A stretch of DNA of 64,000 nt from the IMG/VR virus record IMGVR_UViG_3300023184_000025, positions 62,001 to 126,000 of that record, one strand, 5' to 3'. Position numbers and translations under genes: made by a program. The notes below the pieces were generated by a model. The model worked only from the letters and a program-made list of their open reading frames with translations, made no database searches and had not been told where the DNA came from. Numbering within the stretch: position 1 is the first letter of the stretch; each line of letters starts with the position of its first letter. Below are positions 15,240 through 32,220 of this stretch, one piece after another.

Positions 15240-15244
15240 AATTA

Positions 15245-15252
15245 TATTTATA
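15245..15252 (-). promoter_or_regulatory. T4-like late promoter TATAAATA
   Basis: Exact T4 late consensus 5 nt before the ATG. Confidence 0.65.
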
Positions 15253-15319
15253 GTCAAATGTCCAGGACATACTTGCATTATGCCGAACAGTATCTAATAG
15301 AATTGTTGATTTAAAGAAT

Positions 15320-16167: not shown

Positions 16168-16890
16168 TCACGACCAATATTTAGATGAGTCCAAACTATC
16201 CCAATATTTTTTATTGTTGCGATTTGCAAAGTTCTTGACAAGATACTTGGCCATGCCCATGTATCCCATTTTCTTAAACCTGCGCGAATCTTGGCCAAAG
16301 TGGTGTCGAACAATTCGAAACTTTCTAGGGCTGTATTTCCTAGATAAAAAGTAATCTTCCGACGTTGAAAACTGTTCAGGAAATCCTCCAAACTCCTCAA
16401 AACGATCTCTGCGGGTCAGCATGAATGCTCCCACAGCAAATGGACTAATGTATTTCAACACATGATTGATTAGGTTAAATGCTGTGAACCCAATCTTGGC
16501 ACGTAGGTCCTTGTCATAGCATTTAATATTGAGTCCAATAAGATCTAAATTTTTACGCTCAATTAAATTAACTGCATCACGTATAACCGTAGGTTTAAAG
16601 AAGCGAACATCAGCATCAATAAACAAGATGTAAGGTGTAGTTACCAGTCGTGCTCCACAATTTTTAGCAAAGGAAACAGGCCCACCATCTATGATTTCTA
16701 CATTCAAATTGCCCTTTGTTGCTTGGATAACTTCACGGGTATTGTCAGTTGAGCAGTCTGCAATAATAATTCTAGTGCTACCTATCATTTGATTGCGCAG
16801 ATGTGTTAGAAGATAGGAAATATAGTTTTCCTCATTCTTACAAGGAATCACAATAGTAATTTTATCACTGAATTTTATTGTTTCTTGCAT
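16168..16890 (-). CDS. Glycosyltransferase family 2
   Basis: IVIPCKNEE, DCSTD, FIDAD, SED motifs. Confidence 0.9.
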   Translation of the reverse strand: MQETIKFSDKITIVIPCKNEENYISYLLTHLRNQMIGSTRIIIADCSTDNTREVIQATKGNLNVEIIDGGPVSFAKNCGARLVTTPYILFIDADVRFFKPTVIRDAVNLIERKNLDLIGLNIKCYDKDLRAKIGFTAFNLINHVLKYISPFAVGAFMLTRRDRFEEFGGFPEQFSTSEDYFLSRKYSPRKFRIVRHHFGQDSRRFKKMGYMGMAKYLVKNFANRNNKKYWDSLDSSKYWS

Positions 16891-17844: not shown

Positions 17845-18594
17845 TCATACTCTTGTTGATATTTTAGCCAACTTTAAAAAGCCAAATAATTTAAGATACA
17901 TCCATCCAACGTCAAATTCAAACCAGCGTCGACTCAGACGAGGATTGCCTGGATCAAGGTGATGGTTATTGTGTAGTTCTTCACCACCAATGACAATTCC
18001 CCAAGGACTGAAGTTACGACTATGATCTTTGGTTACGCCATTTCTGTACCCTATCCAATGCCCAACACCGTTGACAACACCTGCGGCCCAGAATGGAATC
18101 CATAACATCTGAACTCCCCACACTACAAATCCCCACCAGCTGAAACAAAGTAAATTTATGCCCAATAGCAAAGTAATTCCTAAACGACTGTGTGCGGAAT
18201 ATATGTTGTGTTCTATCCAATCATCCGGGGTTCCAACACCATAGGCATTGACCATGTTTGTATCTTTGCTTGCTGAATGATATAATCCTGCTCCTTTGAA
18301 TAACACATGCCAGAATCCATAAACATGCGGAGAGTGAGGATCGCCTTCTGCATCACTATGTCTGTGATGTTTGCGATGTATTGCTACCCACTGTTTGGTA
18401 ACCATGCCTGTTGTCAACCATAACCAGGCTCGCATAAAATGTTCAAGTATCGGATTGAATTCTATTCCCCGATGCGCTTGGCCACGATGTAAAAATAAAG
18501 TAACACATACTATGGTAATATGTGTCGCTGTCAATGTGTATATTAGTGCTATCATGTAGTATATAGCTGACAAAAATAGTGCTACATATAGCAC
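17845..18594 (-). CDS. desA: Membrane fatty-acid (delta-9-type) desaturase
   Basis: His boxes HRGQAH, HRKHH, HNNHH. Confidence 0.9.
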   Translation of the reverse strand: MLYVALFLSAIYYMIALIYTLTATHITIVCVTLFLHRGQAHRGIEFNPILEHFMRAWLWLTTGMVTKQWVAIHRKHHRHSDAEGDPHSPHVYGFWHVLFKGAGLYHSASKDTNMVNAYGVGTPDDWIEHNIYSAHSRLGITLLLGINLLCFSWWGFVVWGVQMLWIPFWAAGVVNGVGHWIGYRNGVTKDHSRNFSPWGIVIGGEELHNNHHLDPGNPRLSRRWFEFDVGWMYLKLFGFLKLAKISTRV

Positions 18595-18609: not shown

Positions 18610-18897
18610 CTAAGCAAGCATCCTAATCAGGCCAATACTGTCAATGGTGGTTAGCAATAGGTAGTTAGCCAACATGCCAAATGATTTCCTAGTATAAGCA
18701 GCCCAAGCATAGAGAGCGCAGCCAGCAATCCAAATAGGGTACAGAATAAGTAGAGGCGGAGTTGGGACTGTTGTTGCCATAGTAATGGAACAGCCAATGC
18801 TAATAGCCCAAGCGAGCAACTCAATAACAAAACGAATTCTATTAGACTTAAAGTCATCTTGTATCCAATCAAATGTAGGTTTTAAAAGTTCATTCAT
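18610..18897 (-). CDS. Small three-TM membrane protein
   Basis: Hydrophobic; ATGA overlap. Confidence 0.7.
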   Translation of the reverse strand: MNELLKPTFDWIQDDFKSNRIRFVIELLAWAISIGCSITMATTVPTPPLLILYPIWIAGCALYAWAAYTRKSFGMLANYLLLTTIDSIGLIRMLA

Positions 18898-19952
18898 GAT
18901 TTGTTGGGGAAAAAATCCTGCATCACACCTTCTCTGTGCAGGTCAAGTGTTACACAATGTATGCCACCGTCCCAAAAATATCTATGTCTAAACGGCACAA
19001 TGTGAGGAGTAATACCATATCTATCCAAGGCATCAAACACTTGTTTGTTGTAGTTAAACACCATGACATTCTTGGGATCAATAATCAACATGTTGACATC
19101 AAACACAGTTTCTTCTACGTATCCTGTCCAATGTCCCAGCCAGGTTTCAATAGTTTCAATTACATCATTGTCGTATTCAAAACCTGGGATCCACCACTTG
19201 CCGCGATTTTTTTGTTTTAAATCTAAAAATGGTTTAACCTTGCTCCAACTTTGGTCTTGAAGATACACCACTTCCCATCCAGGAAAAGTTTTTTCATAAG
19301 TGGGGATGTCACACAAACTAATAATCAATCCAGGACAAACAGGGCAGAATACGCCATCGGCATGACCACCAGTTTTAACTATATGATTTCTTGTATGTAA
19401 AAAATTTTCATTAATTTCTTTTTCAAGATTTCTTACTTGATCTATATTGGGCATTGTTCCAAAATATAAATCTTTTCCTATCCTAGATATCATTGCACCA
19501 TTGATAGTTGGGTGATTACTTATTTTAATTTGATTGCCCTGAGATTGTACATGTTTTACAATATCTCCATAACAGTCTTGCATGGTGGCAGTTAGCTGAC
19601 TGCTATTCCACGTGCTGATATTTGTGTTAGAACCGAGAAACATTTCTGAATCTGGCTTAGATGTATAAAAATCTTCTCCAGCCATGATCATAATATCCCT
19701 CGGACACATTGGTGGTGGAATATATCTTTCGCCTAATATTTTTTCTGTAGGAAAATTAGGCCTTAGTATCTCTACTCCAAATTCTTGCAATTTTTCGATT
19801 ATGTGCTGGTAATCTTCTTCTGTTTCGGTGGCTATTTTTTCCATGAGTTTACGCACATGTGTTACCTTAATCCATGAATAAAATTCAGGTGGGTAGCTAC
19901 GACCTACTACACAAACTTTCAAAGGATCCCAGTGTTGGTACACACTATACAT
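18894..19952 (-). CDS. Amidinotransferase (glycine/inosamine amidinotransferase family), copy 2
   Basis: WDPLKVCVVG, CPRD, GHADG, GGIHCVT motifs. Confidence 0.85.
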   Translation of the reverse strand: MYSVYQHWDPLKVCVVGRSYPPEFYSWIKVTHVRKLMEKIATETEEDYQHIIEKLQEFGVEILRPNFPTEKILGERYIPPPMCPRDIMIMAGEDFYTSKPDSEMFLGSNTNISTWNSSQLTATMQDCYGDIVKHVQSQGNQIKISNHPTINGAMISRIGKDLYFGTMPNIDQVRNLEKEINENFLHTRNHIVKTGGHADGVFCPVCPGLIISLCDIPTYEKTFPGWEVVYLQDQSWSKVKPFLDLKQKNRGKWWIPGFEYDNDVIETIETWLGHWTGYVEETVFDVNMLIIDPKNVMVFNYNKQVFDALDRYGITPHIVPFRHRYFWDGGIHCVTLDLHREGVMQDFFPNKS

Positions 19953-19980
19953 TTACATGTCTTTCATAAACCTGTTCACT
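19927..19980. repeat. 54-bp exact direct repeat (second copy 21142-21195)
   Basis: Covers the uvsE 3' end and the amidinotransferase start. Confidence 0.9.
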
Positions 19981-20031
19981 GTTAAAGTTATCTTGAATAC
20001 ATTCAGGTGTGGGCTTTAGTAGTTCATTCAT
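19945..20031 (-). CDS. 28-aa chimeric ORF at the duplication junction
   Basis: MNELLKPTPECIQDNFN + SEQVYERHVNV. Confidence 0.55.
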   Translation of the reverse strand: MNELLKPTPECIQDNFNSEQVYERHVNV

Positions 20032-21167
20032 TTTTTATTTGGAAAAAAGTCTTGCATCACACCTTCTCTGTGTAGATCAAGTGTTACACAGTGGATGCCG
20101 CCGTCCCAGAAATATCTGTGTCTAAAATTAATAACGTGTGGAGTAATTCCATATCTACTTAGTGCTTCAAACACGCGATCGTTGTAATTGAACACAATGA
20201 CATTTTTTGGATCAATAATCAGCATGTTGACGTCAAACACAGTTTCCTCAACATACCCGGTCCAATGTCCTAGCCAATTTTCTACAACATCAACCACATT
20301 CTGATCGTATTCAAAACCCGGTATCCACCATTTACCGTTGTTTTTGGCTTTTAAATCTTTGAATGGTTTAATGTGGTCCCAACTCTGTCCTGGGAGATAA
20401 ACAACTTCCCAGCCTGGAAAAGTTTCTGCATAAGTTGGTACATCTTTTAAACTAATAATTAGTCCAGGACAAACCGGACAGTAAACAGCATCTCCGTGAC
20501 CACCGGTATTGATAACATGTGTACGATTATTTGGAAACTCTTGGTTGACCACTTGTTTGATCTTGTTCTGATCGTCAGTGTACGATTCTGTGGCAAAGTA
20601 TAAGTCTTTACCAATTCGAGATGCCATCATTCCTTGCACACAGGGATGAGGACTGGTCTTTATTATATTACCCTGTGATCGAATACGATCAAATATTTTT
20701 TTATAAGGGGAGTGATGACGAAATACTTCTTCTTTGCTTGCATCAAGCCAATTGTGTACTTCAAGGCATTCCTGTTGTACATGACTTGGTAAATCAGTGA
20801 TGTCTACTGATTTTTCTGGCCAGCTTGGATCTTTAACTACGTTATAGAATTCTTCCCACTGATTTTTTGGTCTATAAAATGTCTCACCAATCATAACCAT
20901 AATGTCTCTGGGTTGCAGAGGAGGAGGTGTAAAAGGAGTCCTTGTCTGATTAAACCATTCTACAGGAATCTCAGGACGCAATACCTCTACACCAAAAGTT
21001 TCTAGCACCGTTGCAATTTTTTGCAGATCTTCTTCTGTTTCAATGGCAATACGCTCAAACAGTCTGCGCACATGTGGGACTTTGATCCAGTTATAGAACT
21101 CAGGTGGGTAGCTACGACCTACTACACAAACTTTTAATGGGTCCCAGTGTTGGTACACACTATACAT
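20028..21167 (-). CDS. Amidinotransferase, copy 1
   Basis: Same motifs; paralog of 18894-19952. Confidence 0.85.
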   Translation of the reverse strand: MYSVYQHWDPLKVCVVGRSYPPEFYNWIKVPHVRRLFERIAIETEEDLQKIATVLETFGVEVLRPEIPVEWFNQTRTPFTPPPLQPRDIMVMIGETFYRPKNQWEEFYNVVKDPSWPEKSVDITDLPSHVQQECLEVHNWLDASKEEVFRHHSPYKKIFDRIRSQGNIIKTSPHPCVQGMMASRIGKDLYFATESYTDDQNKIKQVVNQEFPNNRTHVINTGGHGDAVYCPVCPGLIISLKDVPTYAETFPGWEVVYLPGQSWDHIKPFKDLKAKNNGKWWIPGFEYDQNVVDVVENWLGHWTGYVEETVFDVNMLIIDPKNVIVFNYNDRVFEALSRYGITPHVINFRHRYFWDGGIHCVTLDLHREGVMQDFFPNKK

Positions 21168-22179
21168 TTACATGTCTTTCATAAACCTGTTCACTAGCCA
21201 GGTTCTTGCCTTTGGCTTCGCATTGAATATCAAATGTATCAGCAAAGGTCAATGCCCAATCGGTCACAGCGTCGTTCCAATAGAAGTCACTGTGTGCCCG
21301 GAGTTTCTGTTTCTTATAACCTCTAGCAAGAAGTTTATCAAGATCGGGTCTAGTTCCTCGGTCATGGTCAACCAAAAGGTCCTCGCGACTAACACTATAA
21401 TGAAGTGCAGGACGAGCGCCGCGCCAAGAGTCAATAACCCGCTTGACACGATCGTCCTGCGCGGTAATGTACTCTCCCGAGTTAATCCAGTGGTGGTGTA
21501 GGTCCAATACAAGAGCCACATGCTGAGCCACAGCCAAAGTAGTGTCAAGTCCATTTGTCATCTCATCATTCTCGATGGTAATTAAGTTTCTTGCTTCGGG
21601 GCTGAGCCTACTCAGAGTCTGCAAGAATTTAGCGGCACCACCTTTACCGCTCAAGTGTACGTTGATCTTGAACCCGTTGTCATGCCATGTGTTACCATAG
21701 CCCATCCACCGTGCCATATCAGCGTGGTATTCAAATTCCAGGATTGAACGTTCTACAATTTCATCTGCTTCGCTTGCTAGTACACAAAACTGGCCAGGAT
21801 GGAAACTCAAACGCACACCGTATTTACGTGCGGCTTCGCCTACGGGGGCAAAGATCTTTGCACAGTGATCTTGAATTTCTTGCCGTTGCCACCAGGCAAT
21901 CCATGATGGTTCAGTATAGCCCTGGAGCATTTCGCTACCGAGACGAACCATTCTACGTTCAGGGGGTAGTGTGGCTACACGTTCGATCATCCGCACAGCC
22001 GCCGATGTATTGTGATTCATGATATCCCATTGGCGTTGGTCTGCTTCGTCCGCATGCTCACGAAGCCACCTCATGGTAGTTGATCTGCCGTTTAGGTCAC
22101 GGTCTTTTGCGTTAACTTTCATACCGCCACATTCTGTGGGGTCATTAAGCCATTTGCAACAAAATCCAATTCGTCCCAT
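21160..22179 (-). CDS. uvsE: UV damage endonuclease
   Basis: RLSFHPGQF, NVH, IENDE, LDLHHH, AHSD, EAKGK motifs. Confidence 0.9.
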   Translation of the reverse strand: MGRIGFCCKWLNDPTECGGMKVNAKDRDLNGRSTTMRWLREHADEADQRQWDIMNHNTSAAVRMIERVATLPPERRMVRLGSEMLQGYTEPSWIAWWQRQEIQDHCAKIFAPVGEAARKYGVRLSFHPGQFCVLASEADEIVERSILEFEYHADMARWMGYGNTWHDNGFKINVHLSGKGGAAKFLQTLSRLSPEARNLITIENDEMTNGLDTTLAVAQHVALVLDLHHHWINSGEYITAQDDRVKRVIDSWRGARPALHYSVSREDLLVDHDRGTRPDLDKLLARGYKKQKLRAHSDFYWNDAVTDWALTFADTFDIQCEAKGKNLASEQVYERHVNV

Positions 22180-22187
22180 AGTGGCTC

Positions 22188-22379
22188 CTACCATTGATGA
22201 ATAACGTTAACACAAATAAAGAAACATGTGATTATATGTATGATAACCCAAAATGTCTTAAGGAAAAGCGCAATTCTAGCTTCACGCAAAGAAAGAATGG
22301 GAACATCGGGTCGATCTTCATCTGTCTGGCCCATCAAATGCCCAGTGGCTCTGGACCAGATGCGTTCAAGTGAATTCAC
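22188..22379 (-). CDS. Small membrane protein
   Basis: C-terminal TM; SD AGGA. Confidence 0.65.
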   Translation of the reverse strand: MNSLERIWSRATGHLMGQTDEDRPDVPILSLREARIALFLKTFWVIIHIITCFFICVNVIHQW

Positions 22380-22401
22380 AATAAAATCCTAGTGAGTTTG
22401 T

Positions 22402-22956
22402 TTACACTAGTAATTTTAACACATTTGGCATTACATCGCAAGTGAGATTGGATAATTTTTTAAAGGATTTGTCAACAGAATTTGGATGATCAACCAAAAC
22501 CCATTGCGTATCTGGGCTAGCCATAATAATACTATGTATTAGGGCAAAATAATTGAAGTTTTTATGCTCTTGAAATCTGTCAGAGGTTTTTTCTTTTTCA
22601 GATAAATCAAATCCAGCTAATAATACAATATCCGAAATGTTGCTAACTAGGTGTAATGCCACAACATCTTCTGGGCAGTCTACTTCCTGTGTAAATGTAC
22701 CTTCGTAGAGTTTAACACCCATTGGTCTTCCTATAGATTGGTAATAGTCTTTAGGCACATAAAAATTACAAACAGCTTGAAATGCACGTTGAATTAATTC
22801 TTGTGCTTTTGTCATGTCGTGACATATAACATTGTCAGTGGAGCATCCACGCCAGGTCTTCCATGAACCCCAGGTTGGACCTATGCTTTTAATAGAATCA
22901 AGGTTAACTGTTGGATCAATTTGATAGCTGTCGGCAAATACCCAATTTATTTTCAT
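22402..22956 (-). CDS. Hypothetical protein, possible Maf/sialyltransferase-like fold
   Basis: ALHL...IVLLAGFD motif. Confidence 0.45.
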   Translation of the reverse strand: MKINWVFADSYQIDPTVNLDSIKSIGPTWGSWKTWRGCSTDNVICHDMTKAQELIQRAFQAVCNFYVPKDYYQSIGRPMGVKLYEGTFTQEVDCPEDVVALHLVSNISDIVLLAGFDLSEKEKTSDRFQEHKNFNYFALIHSIIMASPDTQWVLVDHPNSVDKSFKKLSNLTCDVMPNVLKLLV

Positions 22957-24230
22957 TCAACAGCCTTTAAAGATTGCCAACGAAATGCGCCAATACATAC
23001 CCAGGCAAACGGAGTGTTGGGTTTTGGATCACTGTTAAACACAATGTCTCCGCGTGAGCCACTATATCCAGGAACTGTTGGTTCAAATGCAATACGATGT
23101 TTGTCAATTCTAATTTTTTTGACAGTGGTCTGACCTTCGGCATCTATATCAATGCTGGCCTGTCTATTAACACCGATCGACAATCCTTGTTTCCGACCTG
23201 TTCCAAAATATGCTTGATCTTTAGAAATTTTGCCCGACAACAACGATACTTCTTCGTCCCACACACTCAGAGCCATCTCTGGTTGATTGGTATTGATACC
23301 CACACGTTTATTGATAACCGCTAGAGTATCAAAGATTTTGGCCTGGCCCAAAACAGCAAGTTCTCTAAGAGTGCCAACTTTTTGTAAATTTGATTCAACA
23401 ATTGTTGGATTAATACTGTCATTTGCAATAAGTGGTTTTCCGTTTAGTGTAACTTCACTGAAGTCAATTCCCCCAGCCTTGGCAATATCCAATACTTGAT
23501 TAACTAAATGATTTTTCCATTCATCGTTGGATAGTTCTAGTGTGAGTGACGCAATTTTTGTAGCAAGTTCATTCCACGAATTGTTATCGGTGTTGATTTG
23601 TCCTTTTACAACAAGATTTTGTACTGTTAATGTGTCATCAACAATGGCATTTTTAGAAATAAGATTATTTTCTACTATCACAGTATCGTCAGTGACAATT
23701 AATTCTAATTTGGTTGATTGATCAATAATGCCTGAAGTTTTAAAATTGGTAATTAGTCGATCTTGCCAACGAGTAATACCGTTGTCAATTTCATTAACTA
23801 ACATTTTGTTTAGATCTATTCCGCTGATCTTTTGCAAAAGTTTTAGTGACATTTGCTTGTGAATAGTATTTTCAATTTTGTTTAACCAAGTAGAATCAAC
23901 TACTAGATTATCAATTGTAGACTCAACAAAAGTCTGCACAGAATTATCAACTGCCATTGATATTTTACTAGCATCTATGTATGAATCTAATCCAGGCACA
24001 TGCCCTTGTTCAAATAATTTAGTAACACTATTTTGTACAGTGGATACCAAATCAGGAACTGTTGATATATTGCTAAATTTTGCAGTAATCCTATCTTGTA
24101 CATGTTTTGTAATTTGTTCTTCAATGGCATTGAGCCATTTGCCGTTGCTCATGACGGCAGCAACTTGTTCAGCAACTGCTTTTGCTATTTGTTGTTCTAC
24201 TAACTCTGTTACCGATTTGGTGTCAAGCAT
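22953..24230 (-). CDS. Putative virion/tail-associated protein
   Basis: Helical N-terminus, beta-rich C-terminus ending GDIVFNSDP...WVC. Confidence 0.5.
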   Translation of the reverse strand: MLDTKSVTELVEQQIAKAVAEQVAAVMSNGKWLNAIEEQITKHVQDRITAKFSNISTVPDLVSTVQNSVTKLFEQGHVPGLDSYIDASKISMAVDNSVQTFVESTIDNLVVDSTWLNKIENTIHKQMSLKLLQKISGIDLNKMLVNEIDNGITRWQDRLITNFKTSGIIDQSTKLELIVTDDTVIVENNLISKNAIVDDTLTVQNLVVKGQINTDNNSWNELATKIASLTLELSNDEWKNHLVNQVLDIAKAGGIDFSEVTLNGKPLIANDSINPTIVESNLQKVGTLRELAVLGQAKIFDTLAVINKRVGINTNQPEMALSVWDEEVSLLSGKISKDQAYFGTGRKQGLSIGVNRQASIDIDAEGQTTVKKIRIDKHRIAFEPTVPGYSGSRGDIVFNSDPKPNTPFAWVCIGAFRWQSLKAVE

Positions 24231-25140
24231 GTTCTCTCCATAAATCTAATGTCGTACAGTGAAAACCGCCGCCTAATGTTCTACTATGTCGTAATTCCAA
24301 CGGAACTACTGTAAAACCTCGTTGCTCTAGTATGCGTATCAACTCTGTTTGCTTTTGGTCAACAATCACTGTTGTTGGGTCAACCACTAACATATTTAAG
24401 GCAATCCACTTGCTAGCATACGGGTAATTATAGAAGTCTTGCTCAATAACTTCATCTATATAAATTTTATCCCATTTTTCAAAAATTTTAGGGCAATTTG
24501 ATGAATTAACCCTGCTACCATTCAACAATACAAGGCCTTCGCGCAATGCGGTAATTGTAGAGTCAATATGCACACCACTATAAAAATTACAAATTTCAAT
24601 CTCCACATCCGGGAACTGTTGTTGTAGCCAATCATATGCGGCACGATTGCCTGATGGTGACTCTAAAAATAGCATCTTATCGTTTAGACGCAGTAGATTG
24701 GCCGCATCCAAAATCATACCTTCATTCCTGGGCATGTGTAGATAATTTGGTGACAAGTCAACAATGTTGTGATAGCATTGTAATTCCATGTTTCGACATG
24801 GATACATCATGGCAGTATCTACAATGGTGTCTTTATAAACTAGCAATCTGTCACGTGGGCAATAGTTGTACATTCCATCATGTGTTTGAAAGTTAAGTGG
24901 TTCCGGACGCACAACTTCTACACCTAGGCTGATCAGGGTTGTTGCCAACTTATCCAGATCTTCATTGGCTTCGTCAATGATCCTTTGAGGCACAGGACCA
25001 CGTGGAACAGGAGTTTTTTTCCAGGAAGTTTTGTTACTTTCCAATTTAAACACAGGATCGTTCACAGGCCAGTTTGCATCTGTGGCAGATCCAACTACAC
25101 AAGTTTTAAGTTTATCCCATTCGTTTTGGCTATAAATCAT
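24223..25140 (-). CDS. Amidinotransferase, copy 3 (StrB1-like)
   Basis: NEWDKL, CPRD, HIDST, GGGFHCTT motifs. Confidence 0.85.
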   Translation of the reverse strand: MIYSQNEWDKLKTCVVGSATDANWPVNDPVFKLESNKTSWKKTPVPRGPVPQRIIDEANEDLDKLATTLISLGVEVVRPEPLNFQTHDGMYNYCPRDRLLVYKDTIVDTAMMYPCRNMELQCYHNIVDLSPNYLHMPRNEGMILDAANLLRLNDKMLFLESPSGNRAAYDWLQQQFPDVEIEICNFYSGVHIDSTITALREGLVLLNGSRVNSSNCPKIFEKWDKIYIDEVIEQDFYNYPYASKWIALNMLVVDPTTVIVDQKQTELIRILEQRGFTVVPLELRHSRTLGGGFHCTTLDLWREHA

Positions 25141-25655
25141 AGATGTCCAGTAATTTGAAGAGTGTACCTTGGTTCAAGTCCAATGTTAGCTGCCATATGT
25201 GGAGTATCGTATGACCATTCAACCACGGTGCCGGCTTGCCAATTAACAACAGGTTCTCCTAACACTTCAAGATAATGTCCTGACTTCCAGTCTTCTACCA
25301 GAACAATAGCTCGTCTTATTTTGTGCTCTTGACCTTTTAATTTAAAAATATCAACATACCTAACATAAAGATCACTATGGGCTGGCATCACTGTTCCAGT
25401 ATGCATTCTGTAATAAGCAGTACCAATATCTTTCCATCCCCGAGATTCAAACAAATTAATAAATTTTTGATTCCACGATGGTAATTGATGTCTCATGTCA
25501 CAAAGGTCACCAGTAATTTTGCTCTGATATCCTTGATTGATCCAATGGTTAACACTTATTGGATCGTTAAACGGTTCATTGATGTAGTCAAGATGTTTGT
25601 ATTCATTATCCCAGAATACATCAATGTTGTACTTACGACTGTCGTGTGTTGCCAT
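25137..25655 (-). CDS. 2OG-Fe(II) oxygenase-like protein
   Basis: HSD...H...RYTLQITG. Confidence 0.65.
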   Translation of the reverse strand: MATHDSRKYNIDVFWDNEYKHLDYINEPFNDPISVNHWINQGYQSKITGDLCDMRHQLPSWNQKFINLFESRGWKDIGTAYYRMHTGTVMPAHSDLYVRYVDIFKLKGQEHKIRRAIVLVEDWKSGHYLEVLGEPVVNWQAGTVVEWSYDTPHMAANIGLEPRYTLQITGHL

Positions 25656-26871
25656 AGTGGATAATTTTGTAACCTGTCATATCAACCATTTTGCGCCATG
25701 GATCTACAATGATACTGCCAGCTTCAATAGGAGTATAGAATGTATCGTCTCGTACATCTCCAGTGTATCCATAGGTAATTTGTCGATTGTGTGCCATTAA
25801 TAATACCACAGGGCCTTTGACAGATGCAATTACATCGTTGTTGTCATCTGCCAATGGATCTAAATATTTAACGGTGCGGCCTGCTTCTTTAATGTAGTGC
25901 CCAATTAAAGTGCTGTAGCTACCAATACAATAAGGAACATCAGGCTTGTATGCTTTGCCATGAATGATAATTGGTAAATTTTTCTTTTCAGCAATATCAA
26001 CAAGAAATAGTGCTAGATTTTTTGCTTGAACTTCTCGAGCATGCATGATTGTATCAAACAAGTCATATCCAATGTCATACTCTTCAGCCAGCCAGCGCAA
26101 GGCAATGTTGTCACGTGGGTGGCATGCTCCTGCATCGCCCATGCCAGCTGTCATGTACTTGGGTCCCATAATACGCATGTTTGACTGTGCCAGTGCGTCA
26201 GTGACAACGTCAACGTTGATGTTACCAATCTTTAGTGCAAAGTCTTGAATCATGTTGACCAGTCCTACCTTGGCACTGATGAATGTATTATAGAAGATTT
26301 TGATGGCTTCGCATTCGTCCCAGGTGCCAGTCACATAACGTGGATTGTTTTTCATCAATGGACGATAGATATCTATTAGATCTCGCATTTCGCTGGCATC
26401 GCCTGTTTCTGTACCAATCATGACCATTTCAGGATTGGCCATGTCCCATTTTACGCTTCCCATGGCAATCAAATAAGGGTTGTATAAAAACTGATGTTTG
26501 TTATCTAACAACGTGGCAAAATGTCTACGTGTAGTTCCTGGAAGTACTGTAGAAATCAACACTACTCGTTTTGGTGTGGTGGCAAATTTGTTTACTTTAA
26601 CCAGGGCATCCTTAACTGCGTCGTGTCCAAAATCTTTTGGCTCCATATGACTAGATGGTACACTTCCGTCATACCCTTCGGTATGCGGTGTTGGTACAGC
26701 AATGAAAATCCAGTCACTCTTGTTGACTACCTCTTCGATGTCACAAACTTTAACCGACTCGCTTTCTCGTGGGTAAATATCATAACCACGTACAGTATAT
26801 TTTTCAGCGAAGACTTCTGCGCAATCCAAACCTAGCTTACCTAGGCCAATAAACCCAATATTATTTGACAT
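25633..26871 (-). CDS. UDP-glucose/GDP-mannose dehydrogenase family protein
   Basis: GLGKLG, AVPTP, STVLPGT, GACHPRD, AYKP motifs. Confidence 0.9.
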   Translation of the reverse strand: MSNNIGFIGLGKLGLDCAEVFAEKYTVRGYDIYPRESESVKVCDIEEVVNKSDWIFIAVPTPHTEGYDGSVPSSHMEPKDFGHDAVKDALVKVNKFATTPKRVVLISTVLPGTTRRHFATLLDNKHQFLYNPYLIAMGSVKWDMANPEMVMIGTETGDASEMRDLIDIYRPLMKNNPRYVTGTWDECEAIKIFYNTFISAKVGLVNMIQDFALKIGNINVDVVTDALAQSNMRIMGPKYMTAGMGDAGACHPRDNIALRWLAEEYDIGYDLFDTIMHAREVQAKNLALFLVDIAEKKNLPIIIHGKAYKPDVPYCIGSYSTLIGHYIKEAGRTVKYLDPLADDNNDVIASVKGPVVLLMAHNRQITYGYTGDVRDDTFYTPIEAGSIIVDPWRKMVDMTGYKIIHYGNTRQS

Positions 26872-28174
26872 GTTAATTCCTATTGATAAAATGTATCACT
26901 ACCTCGAAAGTTGTGTTGATTGTGATGTATTAATTTATCACTTTTATCCACACGGTAGTAAAGAAATTGAAGACCTTTCACAGTTTTCTAGTAAAGATCG
27001 TTCTTGGTTTGAATGGAACACCAGTTTGCTTATGGTCATGCACGATCAGGAACCTTTGAATTTTGACTATTACGATGAGGATAATTTAACAAACAGTATG
27101 TTACCTTGGTTTGATAAACACGACAAGTTAACTGCAAAAACCATGGAATTGGTGCCCGAAACTAAAGATATTTTAAGTAGACAAAACTTAAACTTTGTCT
27201 GTTACGGTCGTTCAATCTATGATAAAACGCTAATTTGTCACAGTGAGCAAAGATCTGAAAATTTAAAAAAGTACCAAGAAAATAACATGGTAGGGGTTTA
27301 TTGGTGGAGTCATGCAATTATTTCTAGAGACTGGTATCGTTATGCCGAACTTGATCCGTTGTTGATTTATACAAACTCATTTAACAAAGACTTTAACATT
27401 TACAATCGAGCATGGTCTGGTTCTAGAGAATATCGTGTAAAATTTACAGACCTGCTTGTTGAAAACAATTTGATTAATAACTCAAACATTAAATTTTCTA
27501 CTACCTGTGATCAACAACATTATCAACAATATCTTTATAAAAATCCAAAATTTATACCTAACAATGATTTATCAATGTTGCCTGAACCAACAGCGTCATC
27601 GACTTATAGTGCAGATTATTCTGCGGACGACTACAAAGAATGTTGGTTTGATGTTGTGCTTGAAACACTATTTGATGATCAACGGTTGCATATCACAGAA
27701 AAAACCCTACGACCAATTGCCTGTGGCAAACCATTTATTTTGACAGCCACACACGGAAGCCTTGAGTATCTTCATAGTTATGGTTTTAAAACATTCGGGG
27801 ATTACATCAACGAAAGCTATGATTCGATCTCAGATCCGTATCAACGATTAGAAGCAATAATTCAGTTAATGACAAAAATATCAATGCTATCACCAAATGA
27901 AAAAGAAGAACTTAATAAAAAATTTCTTCCTATAATCAAATACAATCAGCAAAGATTCTTTAGTAAAGAATTTAGTGACCGGGTAATCAACGAATTTAAA
28001 ACAAATTATAAATTGGCCAGAGACATTGCTAATCAGCATTGCACTGGACAAGCTTGGAAATTTGTTAACAAACTTAACTGTACCAATCCTGAAATAAAAG
28101 AAAATCTGTTTAGCGAGAATCCCAAAAAATCCAAAGCTGATATTATTAAGTTTTTTAAACTAATTAAAAGCTAA
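26870..28174 (+). CDS. Putative glycosyltransferase-like protein
   Basis: VVLET...ITEKTLRPI...PFI...GFKTF motif; paralogous motif in 58783-59847. Confidence 0.55.
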   Translation: MLIPIDKMYHYLESCVDCDVLIYHFYPHGSKEIEDLSQFSSKDRSWFEWNTSLLMVMHDQEPLNFDYYDEDNLTNSMLPWFDKHDKLTAKTMELVPETKDILSRQNLNFVCYGRSIYDKTLICHSEQRSENLKKYQENNMVGVYWWSHAIISRDWYRYAELDPLLIYTNSFNKDFNIYNRAWSGSREYRVKFTDLLVENNLINNSNIKFSTTCDQQHYQQYLYKNPKFIPNNDLSMLPEPTASSTYSADYSADDYKECWFDVVLETLFDDQRLHITEKTLRPIACGKPFILTATHGSLEYLHSYGFKTFGDYINESYDSISDPYQRLEAIIQLMTKISMLSPNEKEELNKKFLPIIKYNQQRFFSKEFSDRVINEFKTNYKLARDIANQHCTGQAWKFVNKLNCTNPEIKENLFSENPKKSKADIIKFFKLIKS

Positions 28175-28555: not shown

Positions 28556-29344
28556 ATGCAATTTTCATTTGATCTTATTTCAGACCTTCATTTAGAAACG
28601 TGGCCCGAGTTTAATTGGGAAGGCCAAGCCACCAGCCAATTCTGTATTGTTGCTGGGGATGTTTCAAAAAGTCACCAACTCCTTTCACAGTCCCTCAGTC
28701 ACCTTAGTGACTGTTACCAAGGTGTTTTTTATATCGACGGCAACGACGAGCATAAACAAAATCTCAATCAAATTGGGGGCAATTACAAAGAAATTCAAGG
28801 TATCCTTGATGAGTTTCCAAATGTCATTTATCTTCAAGACAACGCTGTGGTAGTCAATGGTGTAGCAATCATTGCAACCAATGGTTGGTGGACCTGGGAC
28901 TTTGATGCTGATCTTGATCCGGTCGAAAGCAAACAAGCATTTAGAGATAAGTTCAACTGTGAATCCTGGGTTCCTGAGGTTATTGAAAGTATTGCATTTA
29001 ATGATGTTGATTATCTGTCTTCGTCAGTTAAACGGCTACAAACTCATAGCGATGTTAAAAAAATTATTGTTGTCACACATACAGTACCGTCTAGAGATTT
29101 AATTAGTCACGACGTTGAACTAATAGGAACACATAGATACAATACCATGGGTAATAGTTTTATTCAACAAATACTACACGAAGATTCAGAAAATAAGATT
29201 AGTCATTGGTGCTTTGGGCATTATCATGGCAGCGTTGATCGAGTAATTGACGGAATACGATATGTTAACAACTGTAAAGGAAGAGGTGATACACAATGGA
29301 AGAAGTCAGTTTATCATCCTTTACGAATTGAAGTTGATTTTTAA
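28556..29344 (+). CDS. Calcineurin-like metallophosphoesterase
   Basis: SDLH, AGD, GNDEH, THTVP, FGHYH motifs. Confidence 0.85.
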   Translation: MQFSFDLISDLHLETWPEFNWEGQATSQFCIVAGDVSKSHQLLSQSLSHLSDCYQGVFYIDGNDEHKQNLNQIGGNYKEIQGILDEFPNVIYLQDNAVVVNGVAIIATNGWWTWDFDADLDPVESKQAFRDKFNCESWVPEVIESIAFNDVDYLSSSVKRLQTHSDVKKIIVVTHTVPSRDLISHDVELIGTHRYNTMGNSFIQQILHEDSENKISHWCFGHYHGSVDRVIDGIRYVNNCKGRGDTQWKKSVYHPLRIEVDF

Positions 29345-29643
29345 GCAATCTCGGGTTCTAATTTAATCTGCAGTGGGTACCCTTCGGTTCTGGCACTAAC
29401 AGTAATTTCAATTCCCTTTTGCTCGGCAATTTCATACGGCAAAACTGCAACACAGGCAGATCCTGCATCGTGAATATCTGTTGTAATTTTTTCAGCGGTA
29501 ACTGTGGTATATTCAAAATATTGAATTAAACTTCCAATTACAAATTCCATAGATGTTTGATTGTCGTTGATATAGATAACCTTAAACATTGGAGGCTCTG
29601 CCAATCTTACGTTTGGTTTAATTCTATTTTTGGTGTCGGCCAT
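29341..29643 (-). CDS. clpS: ClpS adaptor
   Basis: FKVIYINDNQTSMEFV, IHDAG, YEIAEQK, YPL motifs. Confidence 0.9.
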   Translation of the reverse strand: MADTKNRIKPNVRLAEPPMFKVIYINDNQTSMEFVIGSLIQYFEYTTVTAEKITTDIHDAGSACVAVLPYEIAEQKGIEITVSARTEGYPLQIKLEPEIA

Positions 29644-29664
29644 TGTTATTATCTTCCTTTGCGG

Positions 29665-29695
29665 ATACTTGTAGGGCACCGTGCCCTACAAGTAT
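29665..29695. repeat. Perfect 15-bp inverted repeat
   Basis: ATACTTGTAGGGCAC-C-GTGCCCTACAAGTAT. Confidence 0.85.
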
Positions 29696-29713: not shown

Positions 29714-30148
29714 TTATGAAGCGTAGTTAATTGCAATAGTTTTTGGCTTGGCTGAGTCAGGAATTACACGCTCTAGCTTGACAGATAAGATTCCGTCTTT
29801 GGCCACAGCATCCTTAACTTCAACATGATCACCTAGACTAAATGTGCGAATAAACTTGCGAGCACTAATGCCCTGATGACGGAAAATATATCCTTCGGGC
29901 GTTGTTTCTGTTTTTTCGCCGGTGATAATAATTTCACCGTCTTTAACAGTGATTTCAAGATCGCCTTGATTAAATCCGGCCACGGCAACCTGTACTTCGT
30001 AGGTGTTTTCACCTGTTTCTACAATGTTATATGGAGGATAATTAGTTGCGGCGTGATCGATCTGATTAACAATACGATCAAATAGTCTATCAACGCCAAT
30101 AGCGTTACGATAGAAGGGGGTGATATCAAAAGATGTGATTTTAGTCAT
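29714..30148 (-). CDS. Small heat-shock protein (Hsp20/IbpA-like)
   Basis: NYPPYNI, AVAGF, GISARKF, GIL motifs. Confidence 0.92.
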   Translation of the reverse strand: MTKITSFDITPFYRNAIGVDRLFDRIVNQIDHAATNYPPYNIVETGENTYEVQVAVAGFNQGDLEITVKDGEIIITGEKTETTPEGYIFRHQGISARKFIRTFSLGDHVEVKDAVAKDGILSVKLERVIPDSAKPKTIAINYAS

Positions 30149-31023: not shown

Positions 31024-32220
31024 TTATATGTTATCAGGATTATTTATTAGGTCGGCATTGATATTCACGCATTTAATTTCTCGCTTGACATAGTCTCGTA
31101 GTTTAAACATGTGCGGCATTAGTGCTCGTTCAACTTCGGATTGCAAAGCTCTTGCTCCAGTTCCTGAATTAATTGCACGTTTTACAATTGCGTCAATACT
31201 GCTAGATTCAAAATTTAGTTCAACTTGATCTTGTTTGAAAATCCAACGATATTGATCTAAGATATTGTGTTTTACTTCAGTCAGTACACGAGTCATTGAT
31301 GACTCATCTAATTCTTCCAAAGTAACTACACTAGGAAAACGTCCTACAAATTCAGGAATCATTCCAAAACGCACCAGGTCGTCTGGAGTAACCTGGGTCA
31401 GGTCAACATCTCTGTTAGAAATCATTTCTGTGTTAAATCCAATATTTGATCCGTTGATACGATTTTTTAAAATGCTGTTAAGGCCAACAAATGCTCCACC
31501 TGTAATAAACAAAATTTTACTGGTGTCAATTTCGATCATTTCGCCTCCGGGATGTTTTCTACCACCGGAGTTTGGAATACGACATACAGTACCTTCAACT
31601 AGCTTTAGCAATGCTTGTTGAACACCTTCTCCTGATACGTCCCTGGTGATACTAGTGCTTTCACTTTTACGTGCAATTTTATCAATTTCATCTACAAATA
31701 CAATTCCATGCTGTGCTTTTTCAACGTCATTACCCGATGCCGCATATAATCGACTAATCAACATTTCAACGTCGTCACCAACATAGCCTGCTTCAGTAAT
31801 ACTGGTAGCATCTGCAATAACAAACGGAACATCTAAATATCTTGCCACTGTCTTGGCAAGAAGTGTTTTACCTGATCCAGTTGGGCCAAGCATAAGAATG
31901 TTGGCTTTGGATAGTTCAATTTCTGTTCCTATGTTTTGTAGTCGTTTGTAATGATTAACAATTGCAACGCTAAGAACAACTTTTGCACGATCTTGACCAA
32001 TAACGTATTGATCAAGAAATTCTTTAAGCTTCATGGGATCCATGCGTTCTACGTCATTGATGATTTCTGCTGGGGGCTGGTCTTCTAACAAGTCCTGGCA
32101 TAATGTAACACATTCGTTGCAGATTGCAACATCGTCACTGACAATTAGTTTTTTTACTACGTCTTTTTCTTTACCACAGAAGCTACAGGCGTGTTTGTGT
32201 TGTTGCAGTACAGCAGTCAT
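31024..32220 (-). CDS. clpX: ClpX ATPase
   Basis: CSFC/CNEC zinc domain, [28 protein letters not shown] motifs. Confidence 0.95.

What the first reader, a model, noticed from the sequence alone, without database searches (positions are those of the whole stretch)
18894..28174. Three amidinotransferases inside a sugar-modification neighbourhood: possible guanidino-glycan pathway
All three retain Asp/His/Cys catalytic motifs. One is coupled in an operon with a nucleotide-sugar dehydrogenase, 2OG oxygenase, tail-like protein and Maf/sialyltransferase-like protein, with a GT-like gene divergent. Established: this family transfers amidino groups from Arg to amines such as glycine or inosamine phosphate. 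Inference: synthesis of an unusual cationic sugar for virion, host-surface or DNA decoration.
Basis: partly seen in the sequence, partly recalled or inferred. Interest (0 to 1): 0.7.

Follow-up and report, generated by a model that had tools for sequence, protein, structure and literature searches.

The report
Phage amidinotransferases in sugar-tailoring module
A 345-kb T4-like freshwater jumbo phage carries three (six genome-wide) arginine-amidinotransferase-like genes, one locked into a widely conserved module with an oxygenase, a sugar dehydrogenase and a glycosyltransferase, which points to an uncharacterised guanidino-modified sugar whose product and target are not yet known.

Summary
Three intact AGAT/StrB1-family (pentein) genes lie at 18894-19952 (A1), 20028-21167 (A2) and 24223-25140 (A3), all on the minus strand. 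They are of two very different kinds.

A3 is a canonical StrB1-like enzyme (PDB 1bwd, E 1e-62). It keeps every catalytic and arginine-binding residue.

A1 and A2 are a tandem duplicate of a phage-only clade. They keep Cys, His and two Asp. They have Asn/Gln in place of AGAT Asp254 and nothing in place of Arg322.

The stable module is GT-B glycosyltransferase (26870-28174) | NDP-sugar 6-dehydrogenase - small 2OG/Fe oxygenase - A3. Each part is present in 72-80 of 80 related viral contigs. The oxygenase-amidinotransferase pair, often with the glycosyltransferase, recurs at 30-39% identity in cyanophage S-SCSM2R and in MAG contigs. There it sits beside DegT aminotransferases, SDR enzymes, GT2s and a GDP-mannose dehydratase.

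The gene between A2 and A3 is a UvdE endonuclease, not a sugar enzyme. The "tail-like" and "Maf-like" genes are accessory, in about 20 of 80 contigs.

The genome has no ThyA-type hydroxymethylase, DpdA or cyclitol synthase. This weakens the DNA-decoration and streptidine readings.

Best reading: arginine-dependent amidination of an amino sugar for a glycoconjugate, acceptor unknown (confidence about 0.4).

The parts
24223..25140 (-). A3: StrB1-like L-arginine amidinotransferase (305 aa), core of the module
   Evidence: PDB 1bwd E 1.2e-62. D97, D145, H191, D193 and C295 are invariant and R210 nearly invariant in the family. Present in 80/80 related loci. More than 7,400 homologous 90%-clusters.
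25137..25655 (-). o172: small 2OG/Fe(II) oxygenase (P4H-like DSBH); its stop overlaps the A3 start
   Evidence: Invariant H93, D95, H153, R115, N157, Q167. Model pLDDT 91.5. Foldseek top hit is P. putida prolyl-4-hydroxylase, TM 0.61/0.57. Present in 78/80 loci. 30% identical to S-SCSM2R ORF308 in the same position.
25633..26871 (-). Divergent NDP-sugar 6-dehydrogenase (UGD-like, 412 aa)
   Evidence: Pfam N, central and C domains. phrog_9148 E 1e-85. TIGR03026 E 1e-38, below its cut-off. GxGxxG and the catalytic-Cys motif 'GACHPRD' are read in the translation. Present in 80/80 loci. A 52%-identical copy sits next to the A3 homolog in L186.
26870..28174 (+). o434: GT-B fold glycosyltransferase, divergently oriented; one of at least 6 paralogs in the genome
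   Evidence: Model pLDDT 93, pTM 0.90. T4 BGT is top by Foldseek (prob 0.99) and by VIA-align (Z 11.2), followed by POGLUT1, fucosyltransferases and T4 AGT. Invariant R189, E265, E277, K278. Present in 72/80 loci. Within two genes of pentein genes in 8 non-syntenic viral loci, and beside or near them in L184, L186, L187, L188 and L190.
20028..21167 (-). A2: A-type (phage-only clade) amidinotransferase homolog, 379 aa
   Evidence: AGAT E 1.1e-17. D88, Q178 (AGAT D254 position), H224, D226, C360. 4,370 homologous clusters, none with a precomputed Pfam domain.
18894..19952 (-). A1: tandem duplicate of A2 (60.8% identity), 352 aa
   Evidence: Sister to A2 in the tree, support 95/89. D86, N151, H197, D199, C333. 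The A2-A1 tandem pair was seen only in the identical contig L008.
21160..22194 (-). UvdE-type endonuclease: conserved neighbour, probably not part of the pathway
   Evidence: Pfam UvdE E 4e-31. phrog_8420 E 3e-71. TIGR00629 E 1e-26. Present in 76/80 loci.
22402..22956 (-). o184: accessory gene with a possible MptE-like (Maf/WaaZ-type) Rossmann-like fold
   Evidence: Atlas feature lead of 0.90 to clusters with PF01973. No structural match above TM 0.5 outside its own family. Present in 21/80 loci.
   Evidence: No Pfam, PHROG, NCBIfam, PDB-sequence or isolate-phage match. Present in 18/80 loci.
18610..18897 (-). o95: small predicted membrane protein that follows the A-type gene or UvdE in relatives
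   Evidence: Hydrophobic segments are read in the translation. tblastn match in 49/80 loci. Gene orders.
16168..16890 (-). GT2-family glycosyltransferase, 2 kb downstream of A1
   Evidence: GtrB-like PHROG E 2e-6. TIGR04283 E 2e-17, below its cut-off. Present in only 4/80 loci.

Best explanation
The region belongs to a T4-like freshwater jumbo phage and holds two kinds of amidinotransferase-family enzymes.

A3 is a working StrB1-type L-arginine amidinotransferase. With the 2OG/Fe(II) oxygenase translationally coupled to it, the adjacent NDP-sugar 6-dehydrogenase and the divergent GT-B glycosyltransferase, it forms a sugar-tailoring module. Proposed mechanism (inferred, not shown): a nucleotide-activated amino sugar is made by the phage's own DegT aminotransferases and GDP-mannose 4,6-dehydratase, encoded elsewhere in the genome, or by the host. 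This sugar, or the sugar after transfer, receives the amidino group of L-arginine on its amine through the Cys295 thio-uronium intermediate. That yields a guanidino sugar plus ornithine. The dehydrogenase supplies a uronic acid and the oxygenase adds a hydroxyl, either to the sugar or to the acceptor residue. An o434-family GT-B attaches the product to an acceptor, more likely a protein or envelope glycan than DNA.

A1 and A2 are a lineage-specific tandem duplicate of a separate phage-only clade. They retain the Cys/His/Asp core but lack the Asp254 and Arg322 equivalents. They therefore probably handle a guanidino donor or an acceptor other than a free alpha-amino acid. Their link to the A3 module is indirect: their relatives are also found beside o434-like GTs and 2OG oxygenases.
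For: Shown:
- Family membership and residues.
- Two deep clades at 100/100 support, with A1 and A2 as sisters.
- Module conservation: A3 80/80, UGD 80/80, o172 78/80, o434 72/80 related IMG/VR loci, with the inserts next to it varying.
- The same oxygenase-then-amidinotransferase order at 30%/37.5% identity in Synechococcus phage S-SCSM2R, inside a GT, GT25, GT2, DegT-like and radical-SAM cluster.
- L187: PF13640 2OG oxygenase, then A3-like, then o434-like GT, all contiguous.
- L188 and L190: o172-like, then A3-like, with an o434-like GT nearby.
- L186: o434-like GT | A3-like, UGD-like (52% identity), SDR, DegT, GT2, GT2.
- L184: DegT, o434-like, A3-like.
- L189: GMD-like, SDR, DegT, carbamoyltransferase, A3-like (for these five loci).
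- CP220: the amidinotransferase lies beside two GT-A genes.
- The A-type gene of S-SCSM2R lies beside KdsA/KdsB, a GT and 2OG oxygenases.
- A-type genes lie within two genes of o434-like GTs in 8 non-syntenic loci.
- The genome also encodes 2-3 DegT aminotransferases, GMD, an SDR, a NodU/CmcH carbamoyltransferase and at least 6 o434-like GT-Bs. The sixth paralog, A6, sits directly beside two of these GTs and near the DegT genes.

From established knowledge: StrB1 and AGAT use L-arginine and a Cys-amidino intermediate, and DegT enzymes make the amine of amino sugars.
Against: - No product, donor or acceptor is shown.
- No guanidino sugar is known to me in any natural glycan (from memory; not searched for here).
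- The DegT and GMD genes lie more than 50 kb from the module.
- The conserved neighbours further along (UvdE, ClpS-like, Hsp20, AAA+) show that part of the conservation is plain synteny among related phages.
- The MAG contigs with the diverged module may themselves be viral: L187 has 28% GC and L186 has 36% GC.
- The oxygenase is structurally nearest to a protein prolyl hydroxylase. This fits protein modification as well as it fits sugar chemistry.
- A1 and A2 lack two residues that AGAT needs, so they may not be amidinotransferases at all.
Confidence: 0.4

Rival explanations
1. Small-molecule natural product. The amidinotransferases, with the phage's radical SAM enzymes, halogenase-like flavoprotein, carbamoyltransferase, DegT enzymes and GTs, build a diffusible guanidino compound. 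This could be an aminoglycoside-, aminocyclitol- or nucleoside-antibiotic-like molecule acting on competitors or on the host. The authors of the S-SCSM2R paper suggested this for their phage.
For: A3's nearest solved relative is the streptomycin enzyme StrB1. The enzyme repertoire is typical of such clusters: Trp-halogenase-like, NodU/CmcH carbamoyltransferase, B12-radical SAM, DegT. Two metallophosphoesterases flank the module. The S-SCSM2R interpretation is in PMC12801897.
Against: No cyclitol-forming enzyme is present: no DHQ-synthase-like sugar-phosphate cyclase and no myo-inositol-1-phosphate synthase. The genes are scattered over about 240 kb rather than forming one cluster. At least six GT-B paralogs fit glycoconjugate assembly better than one small molecule. 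No export function was identified.
Confidence: 0.2
2. Protein modification. The P4H-like oxygenase hydroxylates a residue of a virion or host protein, and the GT-B O-glycosylates it (Skp1- or collagen-like logic). The amidinotransferase-like enzymes act on protein side chains, converting Lys or Orn to a guanidino group, or act on peptidyl-arginine in the case of the A-type.
For: o172's best structural match is a protein prolyl hydroxylase, and L187 has a PF13640 oxygenase in the same slot. The GT-B model resembles the protein O-glucosyltransferases POGLUT1/2 and SdgB. S-SCSM2R has 2OG oxygenase + GT25 next to its A3 homolog. Its A-type protein and a prolyl-hydroxylase-like protein were detected in purified virions (PMC12801897). 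The A-type lacks the Arg322 clamp for a free alpha-carboxylate.
Against: A3 keeps the Arg322 equivalent and all the residues that bind free arginine. No amidinotransferase is known to act on proteins (from memory). UGD, DegT and GMD point to sugar-nucleotide chemistry. No target protein was identified.
Confidence: 0.15
3. DNA hypermodification. The BGT-like GT-B enzymes place a tailored, cationic sugar on phage DNA bases, with the oxygenase creating the hydroxyl acceptor on a base.
For: T4 beta- and alpha-glucosyltransferases are among the best structural matches of o434 (ranks 1 and 5; rank 1). In L150 an A-type gene and an o434-like GT lie between gp46- and gp47-like genes. From memory, T4 carries alpha-gt next to gene 47. 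A DNA endonuclease (UvdE) is a constant neighbour.
Against: No ThyA-family dCMP/dUMP hydroxymethylase and no DpdA/TGT is present in a genome estimated 99% complete. o172 matches P4H-type oxygenases and not TET/JBP or AlkB among the top 50. All six GT-B paralogs are acidic to neutral (pI 5.4-6.9). The structural matches are at the level of the GT-B fold only (12-13% identity).
Confidence: 0.1
4. Plain auxiliary metabolism of free guanidino compounds: guanidinoacetate/creatine (GATM-type), homoarginine, or amidinated polyamines (HsvA-type) for DNA condensation in a very large capsid.
For: Source annotations call these genes glycine amidinotransferase. Ocean virus AMG surveys discuss a viral creatine pathway (PMC11360552). 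HsvA is among the PDB matches. The phage encodes an amino-acid-type transporter and binding protein upstream.
Against: A3 is twice as similar to StrB1 as to AGAT (215 vs 100 bits). The constant partners are a GT, a sugar dehydrogenase and an oxygenase, not a methyltransferase or polyamine enzymes. The transporter genes occur only in near-identical contigs.
Confidence: 0.1

Closest known systems
StrB1, scyllo-inosamine-4-phosphate amidinotransferase of Streptomyces griseus (PDB 1bwd)
   Same: A3 aligns over its full length at E 1.2e-62. It has identical active-site motifs (CPRD, DAAN, H-I/V-DST, NxSR, GGGFHC.TLD) and, like StrB1, is shorter than AGAT.
   Different: A3 is phage-encoded. No cyclitol-forming enzyme was found in the genome. 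It is partnered with a 2OG oxygenase, an NDP-sugar dehydrogenase and a GT-B, not with streptidine genes. The substrate is unknown.
L-arginine:glycine amidinotransferase AGAT/GATM (PDB 1jdw); also CyrA/SxtG and HsvA
   Same: It is the best solved match of A1/A2 (E 1e-17; family profile 3e-25). The Cys407, His303, Asp305 and Asp170 equivalents are conserved.
   Different: The A-type has Asn (33 of 41 sequences) or Gln at the Asp254 position and a hydrophobic residue or gap at Arg322. It has large inserts and forms a separate phage-only clade on a long stem (branch length 2.58).
Synechococcus phage S-SCSM2R ORF308-309 and ORF266-267 (PMC12801897)
   Same: The same oxygenase-then-amidinotransferase pair (30% and 37.5% identity) sits inside a glycosyltransferase cluster. 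A second, A-type gene lies beside 2OG oxygenases and KdsA/KdsB.
   Different: The authors annotate these as antibiotic-synthesis genes. There is no UGD-like or o434-like partner. That phage is a 244-kb marine cyanophage.
Campylobacter phage CP220/CPt10 putative glycine amidinotransferase (PMC2853527)
   Same: It falls in the StrB1-like clade (about 26% identity) and lies beside two nucleotide-diphospho-sugar transferases in a variable cluster.
   Different: It is surrounded by five radical SAM genes. The upstream 173-aa gene is not detectably related to o172. Its branch in the tree is very long.
T4 beta-glucosyltransferase (PDB 1c3j/1nzd) and other GT-B enzymes
   Same: It is the best structural match of o434 by two methods (Z 11.2, 260 residues aligned). 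Both are GT-B enzymes of T4-like phages.
   Different: Identity is 12-13%. The protein is acidic. No hydroxymethyl-pyrimidine pathway was found in the genome. POGLUT1, fucosyltransferases and others score almost as well.

Membership tests
Amidinotransferase family (AGAT/StrB1; pentein / guanidino-group-modifying superfamily) | Full-length sequence similarity to solved members | tested here: met
   A3: 1bwd E 1.2e-62, AGAT 1e-27. A2: AGAT 1.1e-17. A-type profile: AGAT 3e-25, HsvA 1e-21, StrB1 1.6e-19. Pfam itself gives only a sub-threshold ADI hit for A1.
Amidinotransferase family (AGAT/StrB1; pentein / guanidino-group-modifying superfamily) | C-terminal nucleophilic Cys (AGAT Cys407), and His303/Asp305 and Asp170 equivalents | tested here: met
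   A3: C295, H191, D193, D97. A2: C360, H224, D226, D88. A1: C333, H197, D199, D86. Cys, His and the Asp305 equivalent are invariant in both family alignments. The Asp170 equivalent is invariant in the A3-type and present in 40 of 41 A-type sequences.
Amidinotransferase family (AGAT/StrB1; pentein / guanidino-group-modifying superfamily) | Triad Asp (AGAT Asp254) and substrate-carboxylate clamp (AGAT Arg322) | tested here: inconclusive
   Met by A3 (D145, R210). Not met by A1 (N151; I216) or A2 (Q178; V243, or a gap in hhalign). Across the A-type family the Asp254 position is N in 33 of 41 and D in 2 of 41. A spatial replacement could not be checked without coordinates.
Amidinotransferase family (AGAT/StrB1; pentein / guanidino-group-modifying superfamily) | Transfer of the amidino group of L-arginine to an amine, releasing ornithine | not testable with these tools
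   This needs an enzyme assay.
NDP-sugar 6-dehydrogenase (UDP-glucose/GDP-mannose dehydrogenase family) | Three-domain architecture with an N-terminal GxGxxG and a catalytic Cys | tested here: met
   Pfam N (6e-13), central (8e-15) and C (5e-4) domains. 'GFIGLGKLG' and 'GACHPRD' are read in the translation. The whole-protein score is below the TIGR03026 cut-off (133 vs 190 bits), so this is a divergent member with unknown sugar specificity.
2OG/Fe(II)-dependent oxygenase (DSBH, P4H-like) | HxD...H iron triad, basic residue for the 2OG C5 carboxylate, double-stranded beta-helix fold | tested here: met
   H93, D95 and H153 are invariant. R163 (R/K across the family) lies 10 residues after H153. 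Model pLDDT 91.5. 299 PDB matches at E<=1e-3, dominated by 2OG oxygenases. There is no Pfam hit for o172 itself.
GT-B glycosyltransferases | Two Rossmann-like domains with the C-terminal nucleotide-sugar-binding R/K and E residues | tested here: met
   Model pLDDT 93. 22 PDB representatives at Z>=8, with all of the first 22 rows being GT-B enzymes. Invariant R189, E265, E277, K278. No Pfam or CAZy family could be assigned.
T-even-type DNA glucosyltransferase system (hydroxymethylcytosine glucosylation) | Co-occurrence with a ThyA-family dCMP hydroxymethylase that supplies the acceptor base | tested here: not met
   PF00303 finds nothing in the genome, which is estimated 99% complete. The control rings in 10 of 14 genomes.
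Streptidine / aminocyclitol pathway | A cyclitol-forming enzyme (myo-inositol-1-phosphate synthase or DHQ-synthase-like sugar-phosphate cyclase) together with the amidinotransferase | tested here: not met
   PF07994 and PF01761 find nothing in the genome. A host supply cannot be excluded.
MptE-like / Maf-type nonulosonate or KDO transferases (for 22402-22956) | Recognisable PF01973 domain or a structural match to it | tested here: inconclusive
   No Pfam, PHROG or NCBIfam hit. The Atlas feature score is 0.90 to a cluster in which 34% of members carry PF01973. Structural neighbours outside its own family have TM below 0.5.

The most novel reading that the evidence does not exclude
The oxygenase, StrB1-like amidinotransferase, GT-B and uronate-dehydrogenase module makes an arginine-derived guanidino sugar. 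The phage installs it on its own virion or, through BGT-like GT-B enzymes, on its DNA. To my knowledge this would be the first natural guanidino-glycan and a new class of cationic phage hypermodification. The phage-only A-type clade (more than 4,000 sequence clusters, unseen by Pfam) would be a pentein activity with a new donor or acceptor.
Probability: 0.15. Interest if true: 0.9.

Novelty: new variant of a known kind. Interest (0 to 1): 0.6.

Why it matters
Phage amidinotransferase genes have so far only been labelled by similarity: 'glycine amidinotransferase', 'antibiotic synthesis', 'creatine pathway'. They have never been assayed. This analysis shows three things.

- They fall into two deeply separated clades.
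- Both clades are very abundant in freshwater and marine viral metagenomes: at least 7,400 and 4,370 clusters at 90% identity.
- The canonical clade is tied to a specific, testable four-gene module.

If the product is a guanidino sugar, that would add a new cationic building block to glycobiology. It would also add a new way for large phages to decorate virions, hosts or DNA. The A-type clade offers a natural experiment on what the pentein active site does without the Asp254/Arg322 pair.

Tried and rejected
- **DNA decoration through known routes.** I searched the genome for a ThyA-family hydroxymethylase and for DpdA/TGT. Neither is present.
- **Streptidine-type pathway.** There is no inositol-phosphate synthase and no sugar-phosphate cyclase.
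- **Link to the Campylobacter phage deazaguanine modification.** The amidinotransferase occurs in the CP220-type phages listed. The cited literature gives no role for it, and this genome has no DpdA. I dropped this lead.
- **CP220 gp085 as an o172 homolog.** No similarity was found.
- **'Tail-like' o425.** No support from Pfam, PHROGs, NCBIfam, PDB sequences or isolate phages.
- **o434 in isolate phages.** No match.
- **Promoter and terminator scans.** The counts do not differ from shuffled sequence: 57 vs 50.4 expected promoters, and 3 T4 late-promoter motifs vs 4.6 expected. I make no statement on operon boundaries beyond gene overlap.
- **Megablast of the region against isolate phages.** No match.
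- **First structure job for o172.** I repeated it without that row.
- **Metatranscriptome contigs.** At about 90% identity they lie on UvdE, A3 and the o172/UGD junction. They come from an RNA library that may contain DNA, and from relatives, so they are not counted as evidence of expression.
- **Not done.** No complex prediction was run, because no binding claim is made. The 1.84-billion-representative search was not used.

Full report
**Setting.** The window is bases 62001-126000 of a 345,154-bp viral contig that CheckV rates 99% complete. The contig has a T4-type major capsid gene (Pfam Gp23, E 3e-100). Its relatives carry gp46/gp47-, UvsX- and T4-baseplate-like genes. GC content is about 40%. 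Near-identical DNA occurs in lake and freshwater metagenomes from several studies. This is therefore a real and recurrent T4-like freshwater jumbo phage. No isolate phage matches the region at the DNA level.

**The observation.** From 26871 down to 18610 all genes lie on the minus strand, mostly with overlapping stop and start codons. In transcription order they are:
- a UGD-like dehydrogenase (25633-26871)
- o172 (25137-25655)
- A3 (24223-25140)
- o425 (22953-24230)
- o184 (22402-22956)
- a doubtful 63-codon ORF
- UvdE (21160-22194)
- A2 (20028-21167)
- A1 (18894-19952)
- a 95-aa membrane protein, o95 (18610-18897)

o434 (26870-28174) is divergent. A1, A2 and A3 all match phrog_25854 and solved amidinotransferases.

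**Two kinds of enzyme.** A3 matches StrB1 at E 1.2e-62, against 1e-27 for AGAT. It keeps the equivalents of AGAT Asp170, Asp254, His303, Asp305, Arg322 and Cys407, namely D97, D145, H191, D193, R210 and C295. All are invariant or nearly so in its family.

A1 and A2 are 60.8% identical to each other but only 23-24% identical to A3. They are nearer to AGAT than to StrB1. Direct, profile and profile-profile alignments agree on the following points:
- They keep Cys, His and both substrate-binding Asp residues.
- The Asp254 position is N151 in A1 and Q178 in A2. Across the clade it is Asn in 33 of 41 sequences.
- The Arg322 position is hydrophobic or falls in a 3-residue gap.

A maximum-likelihood tree separates a StrB1-like clade from a phage-only A-type clade at 100/100 support. 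The StrB1-like clade contains A3, S-SCSM2R ORF309, CP220 gp086 and MAG homologs. A1 and A2 are sisters at 95/89. The genome has three more A-type paralogs: A4 and A5 at 204-207 kb and A6 at 264.5 kb.

**The partners.**
- The dehydrogenase has all three UDPG_MGDP_dh domains and the catalytic Cys motif. It scores below the NCBIfam cut-off, so it is a divergent member.
- o172 has no Pfam hit. Its family alignment has an invariant HxD...H triad and an R/K ten residues after the second His. Its model (pLDDT 91.5) matches 2OG oxygenases, and best a bacterial prolyl-4-hydroxylase.
- o434 has no sequence-family hit. Its model (pLDDT 93) is a GT-B glycosyltransferase. T4 beta-glucosyltransferase ranks first by Foldseek and by an independent all-against-all aligner (Z 11.2), closely followed by POGLUT1, fucosyltransferases and T4 alpha-glucosyltransferase.
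- The gene between A2 and A3 is a UvdE-type endonuclease.
- o184 has only a language-model lead to MptE-like (Maf/WaaZ) clusters.
- o425 matched nothing.

**What is conserved.** I fetched 80 IMG/VR loci through A3, at 59-100% identity. The counts by tblastn are:

| Gene | Loci with a match (of 80) |
|---|---|
| A3 | 80 |
| UGD | 80 |
| o172 | 78 |
| UvdE | 76 |
| o434 | 72 |
| o184 | 21 |
| o425 | 18 |

The usual gene order is o121 - o434 - UGD - o172 - A3 - (variable insert) - UvdE - (an A-type gene in a few loci) - o95. The A2-A1 tandem pair was seen only in the identical contig.

Part of this is synteny. The conserved genes beyond o121 are a metallophosphoesterase, a ClpS-like protein, Hsp20 and an AAA+ protein, which have no evident chemical link to the module.

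The decisive evidence is the recurrence at low identity in other backgrounds:
- In the marine cyanophage S-SCSM2R, ORF308 (30% identical to o172) directly precedes ORF309 (37.5% identical to A3). Both lie inside a run of glycosyltransferases, a DegT-like gene and a radical SAM gene.
- In contig L187 (28% GC), a PF13640 oxygenase, an A3 homolog and an o434-like GT are contiguous.
- In L188 and L190, an o172-like domain precedes the A3 homolog, and an o434-like GT is nearby.
- In L186, the order is o434-like GT | A3-like - UGD-like (52% identity) - SDR - DegT - GT2 - GT2.
- In L184, the order is DegT - o434-like - A3-like.
- In L189 (62% GC), the order is GMD-like - SDR - DegT - carbamoyltransferase - A3-like.

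These last five loci are documented. In CP220 the homolog lies beside two GT-A genes.

The A-type clade has its own ancestral slot in T4-like phages: T4-baseplate-like, then c16, c15, the A-type gene and DUF6614, near gp46/47. c16 and c15 each lie within two genes of the A-type gene in 26 of 80 loci. The A-type gene is also within two genes of o434-like GTs in 8 loci not syntenic with the window. In S-SCSM2R it lies beside KdsA/KdsB, a GT and 2OG oxygenases.

**Genome-wide repertoire.** The phage encodes:
- two full-length DegT aminotransferases and a third, shorter one
- a GDP-mannose 4,6-dehydratase and a further SDR
- a NodU/CmcH carbamoyltransferase
- many radical SAM enzymes
- a Trp-halogenase-like flavoprotein
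- at least six o434-like GT-B paralogs

A6 sits directly beside two of these GTs and close to the DegT genes.

The genome lacks a ThyA-family pyrimidine hydroxymethylase, DpdA/TGT, myo-inositol-1-phosphate synthase and a DHQ-synthase-like cyclase. All six GT-B paralogs are acidic to neutral.

**Interpretation.** Shown:
- the families and the residues
- the conserved four-gene module
- its recurrent placement among amino-sugar and glycosyltransferase genes

Inferred: A3 amidinates the amine of an amino sugar, using L-arginine. The acceptor is most plausibly an NDP-4-amino-deoxyhexose of the GMD/DegT type, as the L189 arrangement suggests. The dehydrogenase and the oxygenase tailor the same sugar or its acceptor. 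An o434-type GT-B then transfers it.

The acceptor is unknown. I rank protein or envelope glycan above DNA, because no known base-activating enzyme is present and because the GTs are acidic. The BGT/AGT resemblance keeps DNA open.

A1 and A2 are intact and conserved enzymes of a separate clade with an altered active site. Their chemistry cannot be assigned. Their loss of the Arg322 clamp suggests a substrate without a free alpha-carboxylate.

The rival readings cannot be excluded and are scored separately. They are a diffusible natural product, protein hydroxylation and glycosylation with side-chain amidination, DNA hypermodification, and plain guanidino-compound metabolism.

**Comparison with the literature.** Phage amidinotransferases are mentioned only as annotations:
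- CP220/CPt10: 'putative glycine amidinotransferase' in a radical-SAM-rich variable cluster (PMC2853527).
- S-SCSM2R: 'antibiotic synthesis genes', with the A-type protein found in the virion preparation (PMC12801897).
- AMG surveys: a viral 'creatine biosynthesis' pathway in an ocean survey and a K00613 'glycine amidinotransferase' entry in a karst-lake single-cell study (PMC11360552; PMC8226683).

I found no paper that assays one or that links it to a nucleotide sugar. The families are abundant. None of the listed A-type proteins has a precomputed Pfam domain.

**Verdict.** The enzymes belong to known families. The phage-borne oxygenase/amidinotransferase/GT-B/dehydrogenase module and the A-type clade are, as far as I could find, undescribed variants. 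Interest is moderate to high because the hypothesis is directly testable with a handful of recombinant proteins.

Noticed in passing
window 13119-14396 and 14406-15278 (minus strand): The phage encodes a sodium:dicarboxylate-symporter-family transporter (Pfam SDF, E 1e-64) and a family-3 periplasmic amino-acid-binding protein (SBP_bac_3, E 4.5e-17). They are present only in near-identical contigs. They could supply an amino acid such as arginine, but this is pure conjecture.
   Followed up: partly
G000:C1:204258-205487, 205927-206898 and 264471-265532: Three further A-type amidinotransferase paralogs (A4, A5, A6) bring the genome total to six. A4 and A5 sit in the ancestral slot (T4-baseplate-like, c16, A4, c15, A5, DUF6614) near gp46/47. 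A6 sits beside two o434-like GT-B genes, DegT genes, a radical SAM gene and a Trp-halogenase-like gene.
   Followed up: partly
window 58783-59847 (minus strand); G000:C1:146646-147596, 265525-266736, 266685-267800, 302988-304076: Five more paralogs of the o434 GT-B family, none recognised by Pfam. One of them lies inside the window next to the DnaB-like helicase gene.
   Followed up: partly
window 17845-18594 (minus strand): A membrane fatty-acid-desaturase-family di-iron enzyme (Pfam E 1e-12), conserved in about 23 of 80 related loci. Its role is unknown.
   Followed up: no
window 29341-29679, 29714-30148, 31024-32220 (minus strand): A ClpS-like adaptor, an Hsp20 and a ClpX-like AAA+ protein form a conserved proteostasis block just beyond the module.
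   Followed up: no
loci L178-L182 (MAG contigs labelled Haliscomenobacter, Terrimicrobiaceae, Bacteroidetes UBA11400, Legionella): These 'bacterial' MAG contigs are syntenic with the phage over many genes at 40-90% protein identity. They are almost certainly phage DNA binned with bacteria. The two Haliscomenobacter contigs might be a host hint.
   Followed up: partly
G000:C1:193317-194306 (minus strand): The Gp23 major-capsid match contains one in-frame TAA. This could be the end of the ORF within the alignment, an intron or a split gene.
   Followed up: no
G000:C1:250347-261769, 263222-264469, 273890-275071, 321028-322908: An unusually rich accessory set: at least seven radical SAM proteins (one with a B12-binding domain, one with a SPASM domain), a NodU/CmcH carbamoyltransferase, a Trp-halogenase-like flavoprotein and a Na+/H+ exchanger.
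   Followed up: partly
window 25237-26068 and other stretches of 21001-27000: Contigs from a metatranscriptomic library (run X20), about 90% identical, lie on UvdE, A3 and the o172/UGD junction. They come from relatives, and DNA carry-over is not excluded.
   Followed up: partly
window 26865-26892 (plus strand): The best sigma-70-like site of the region (TTGACA, 16 nt, TAAAAT with an upstream TG; 11 of 12 matches) sits exactly on the head-to-head start codons of the dehydrogenase and o434. The Atlas record of o434 starts at residue 8.
   Followed up: no
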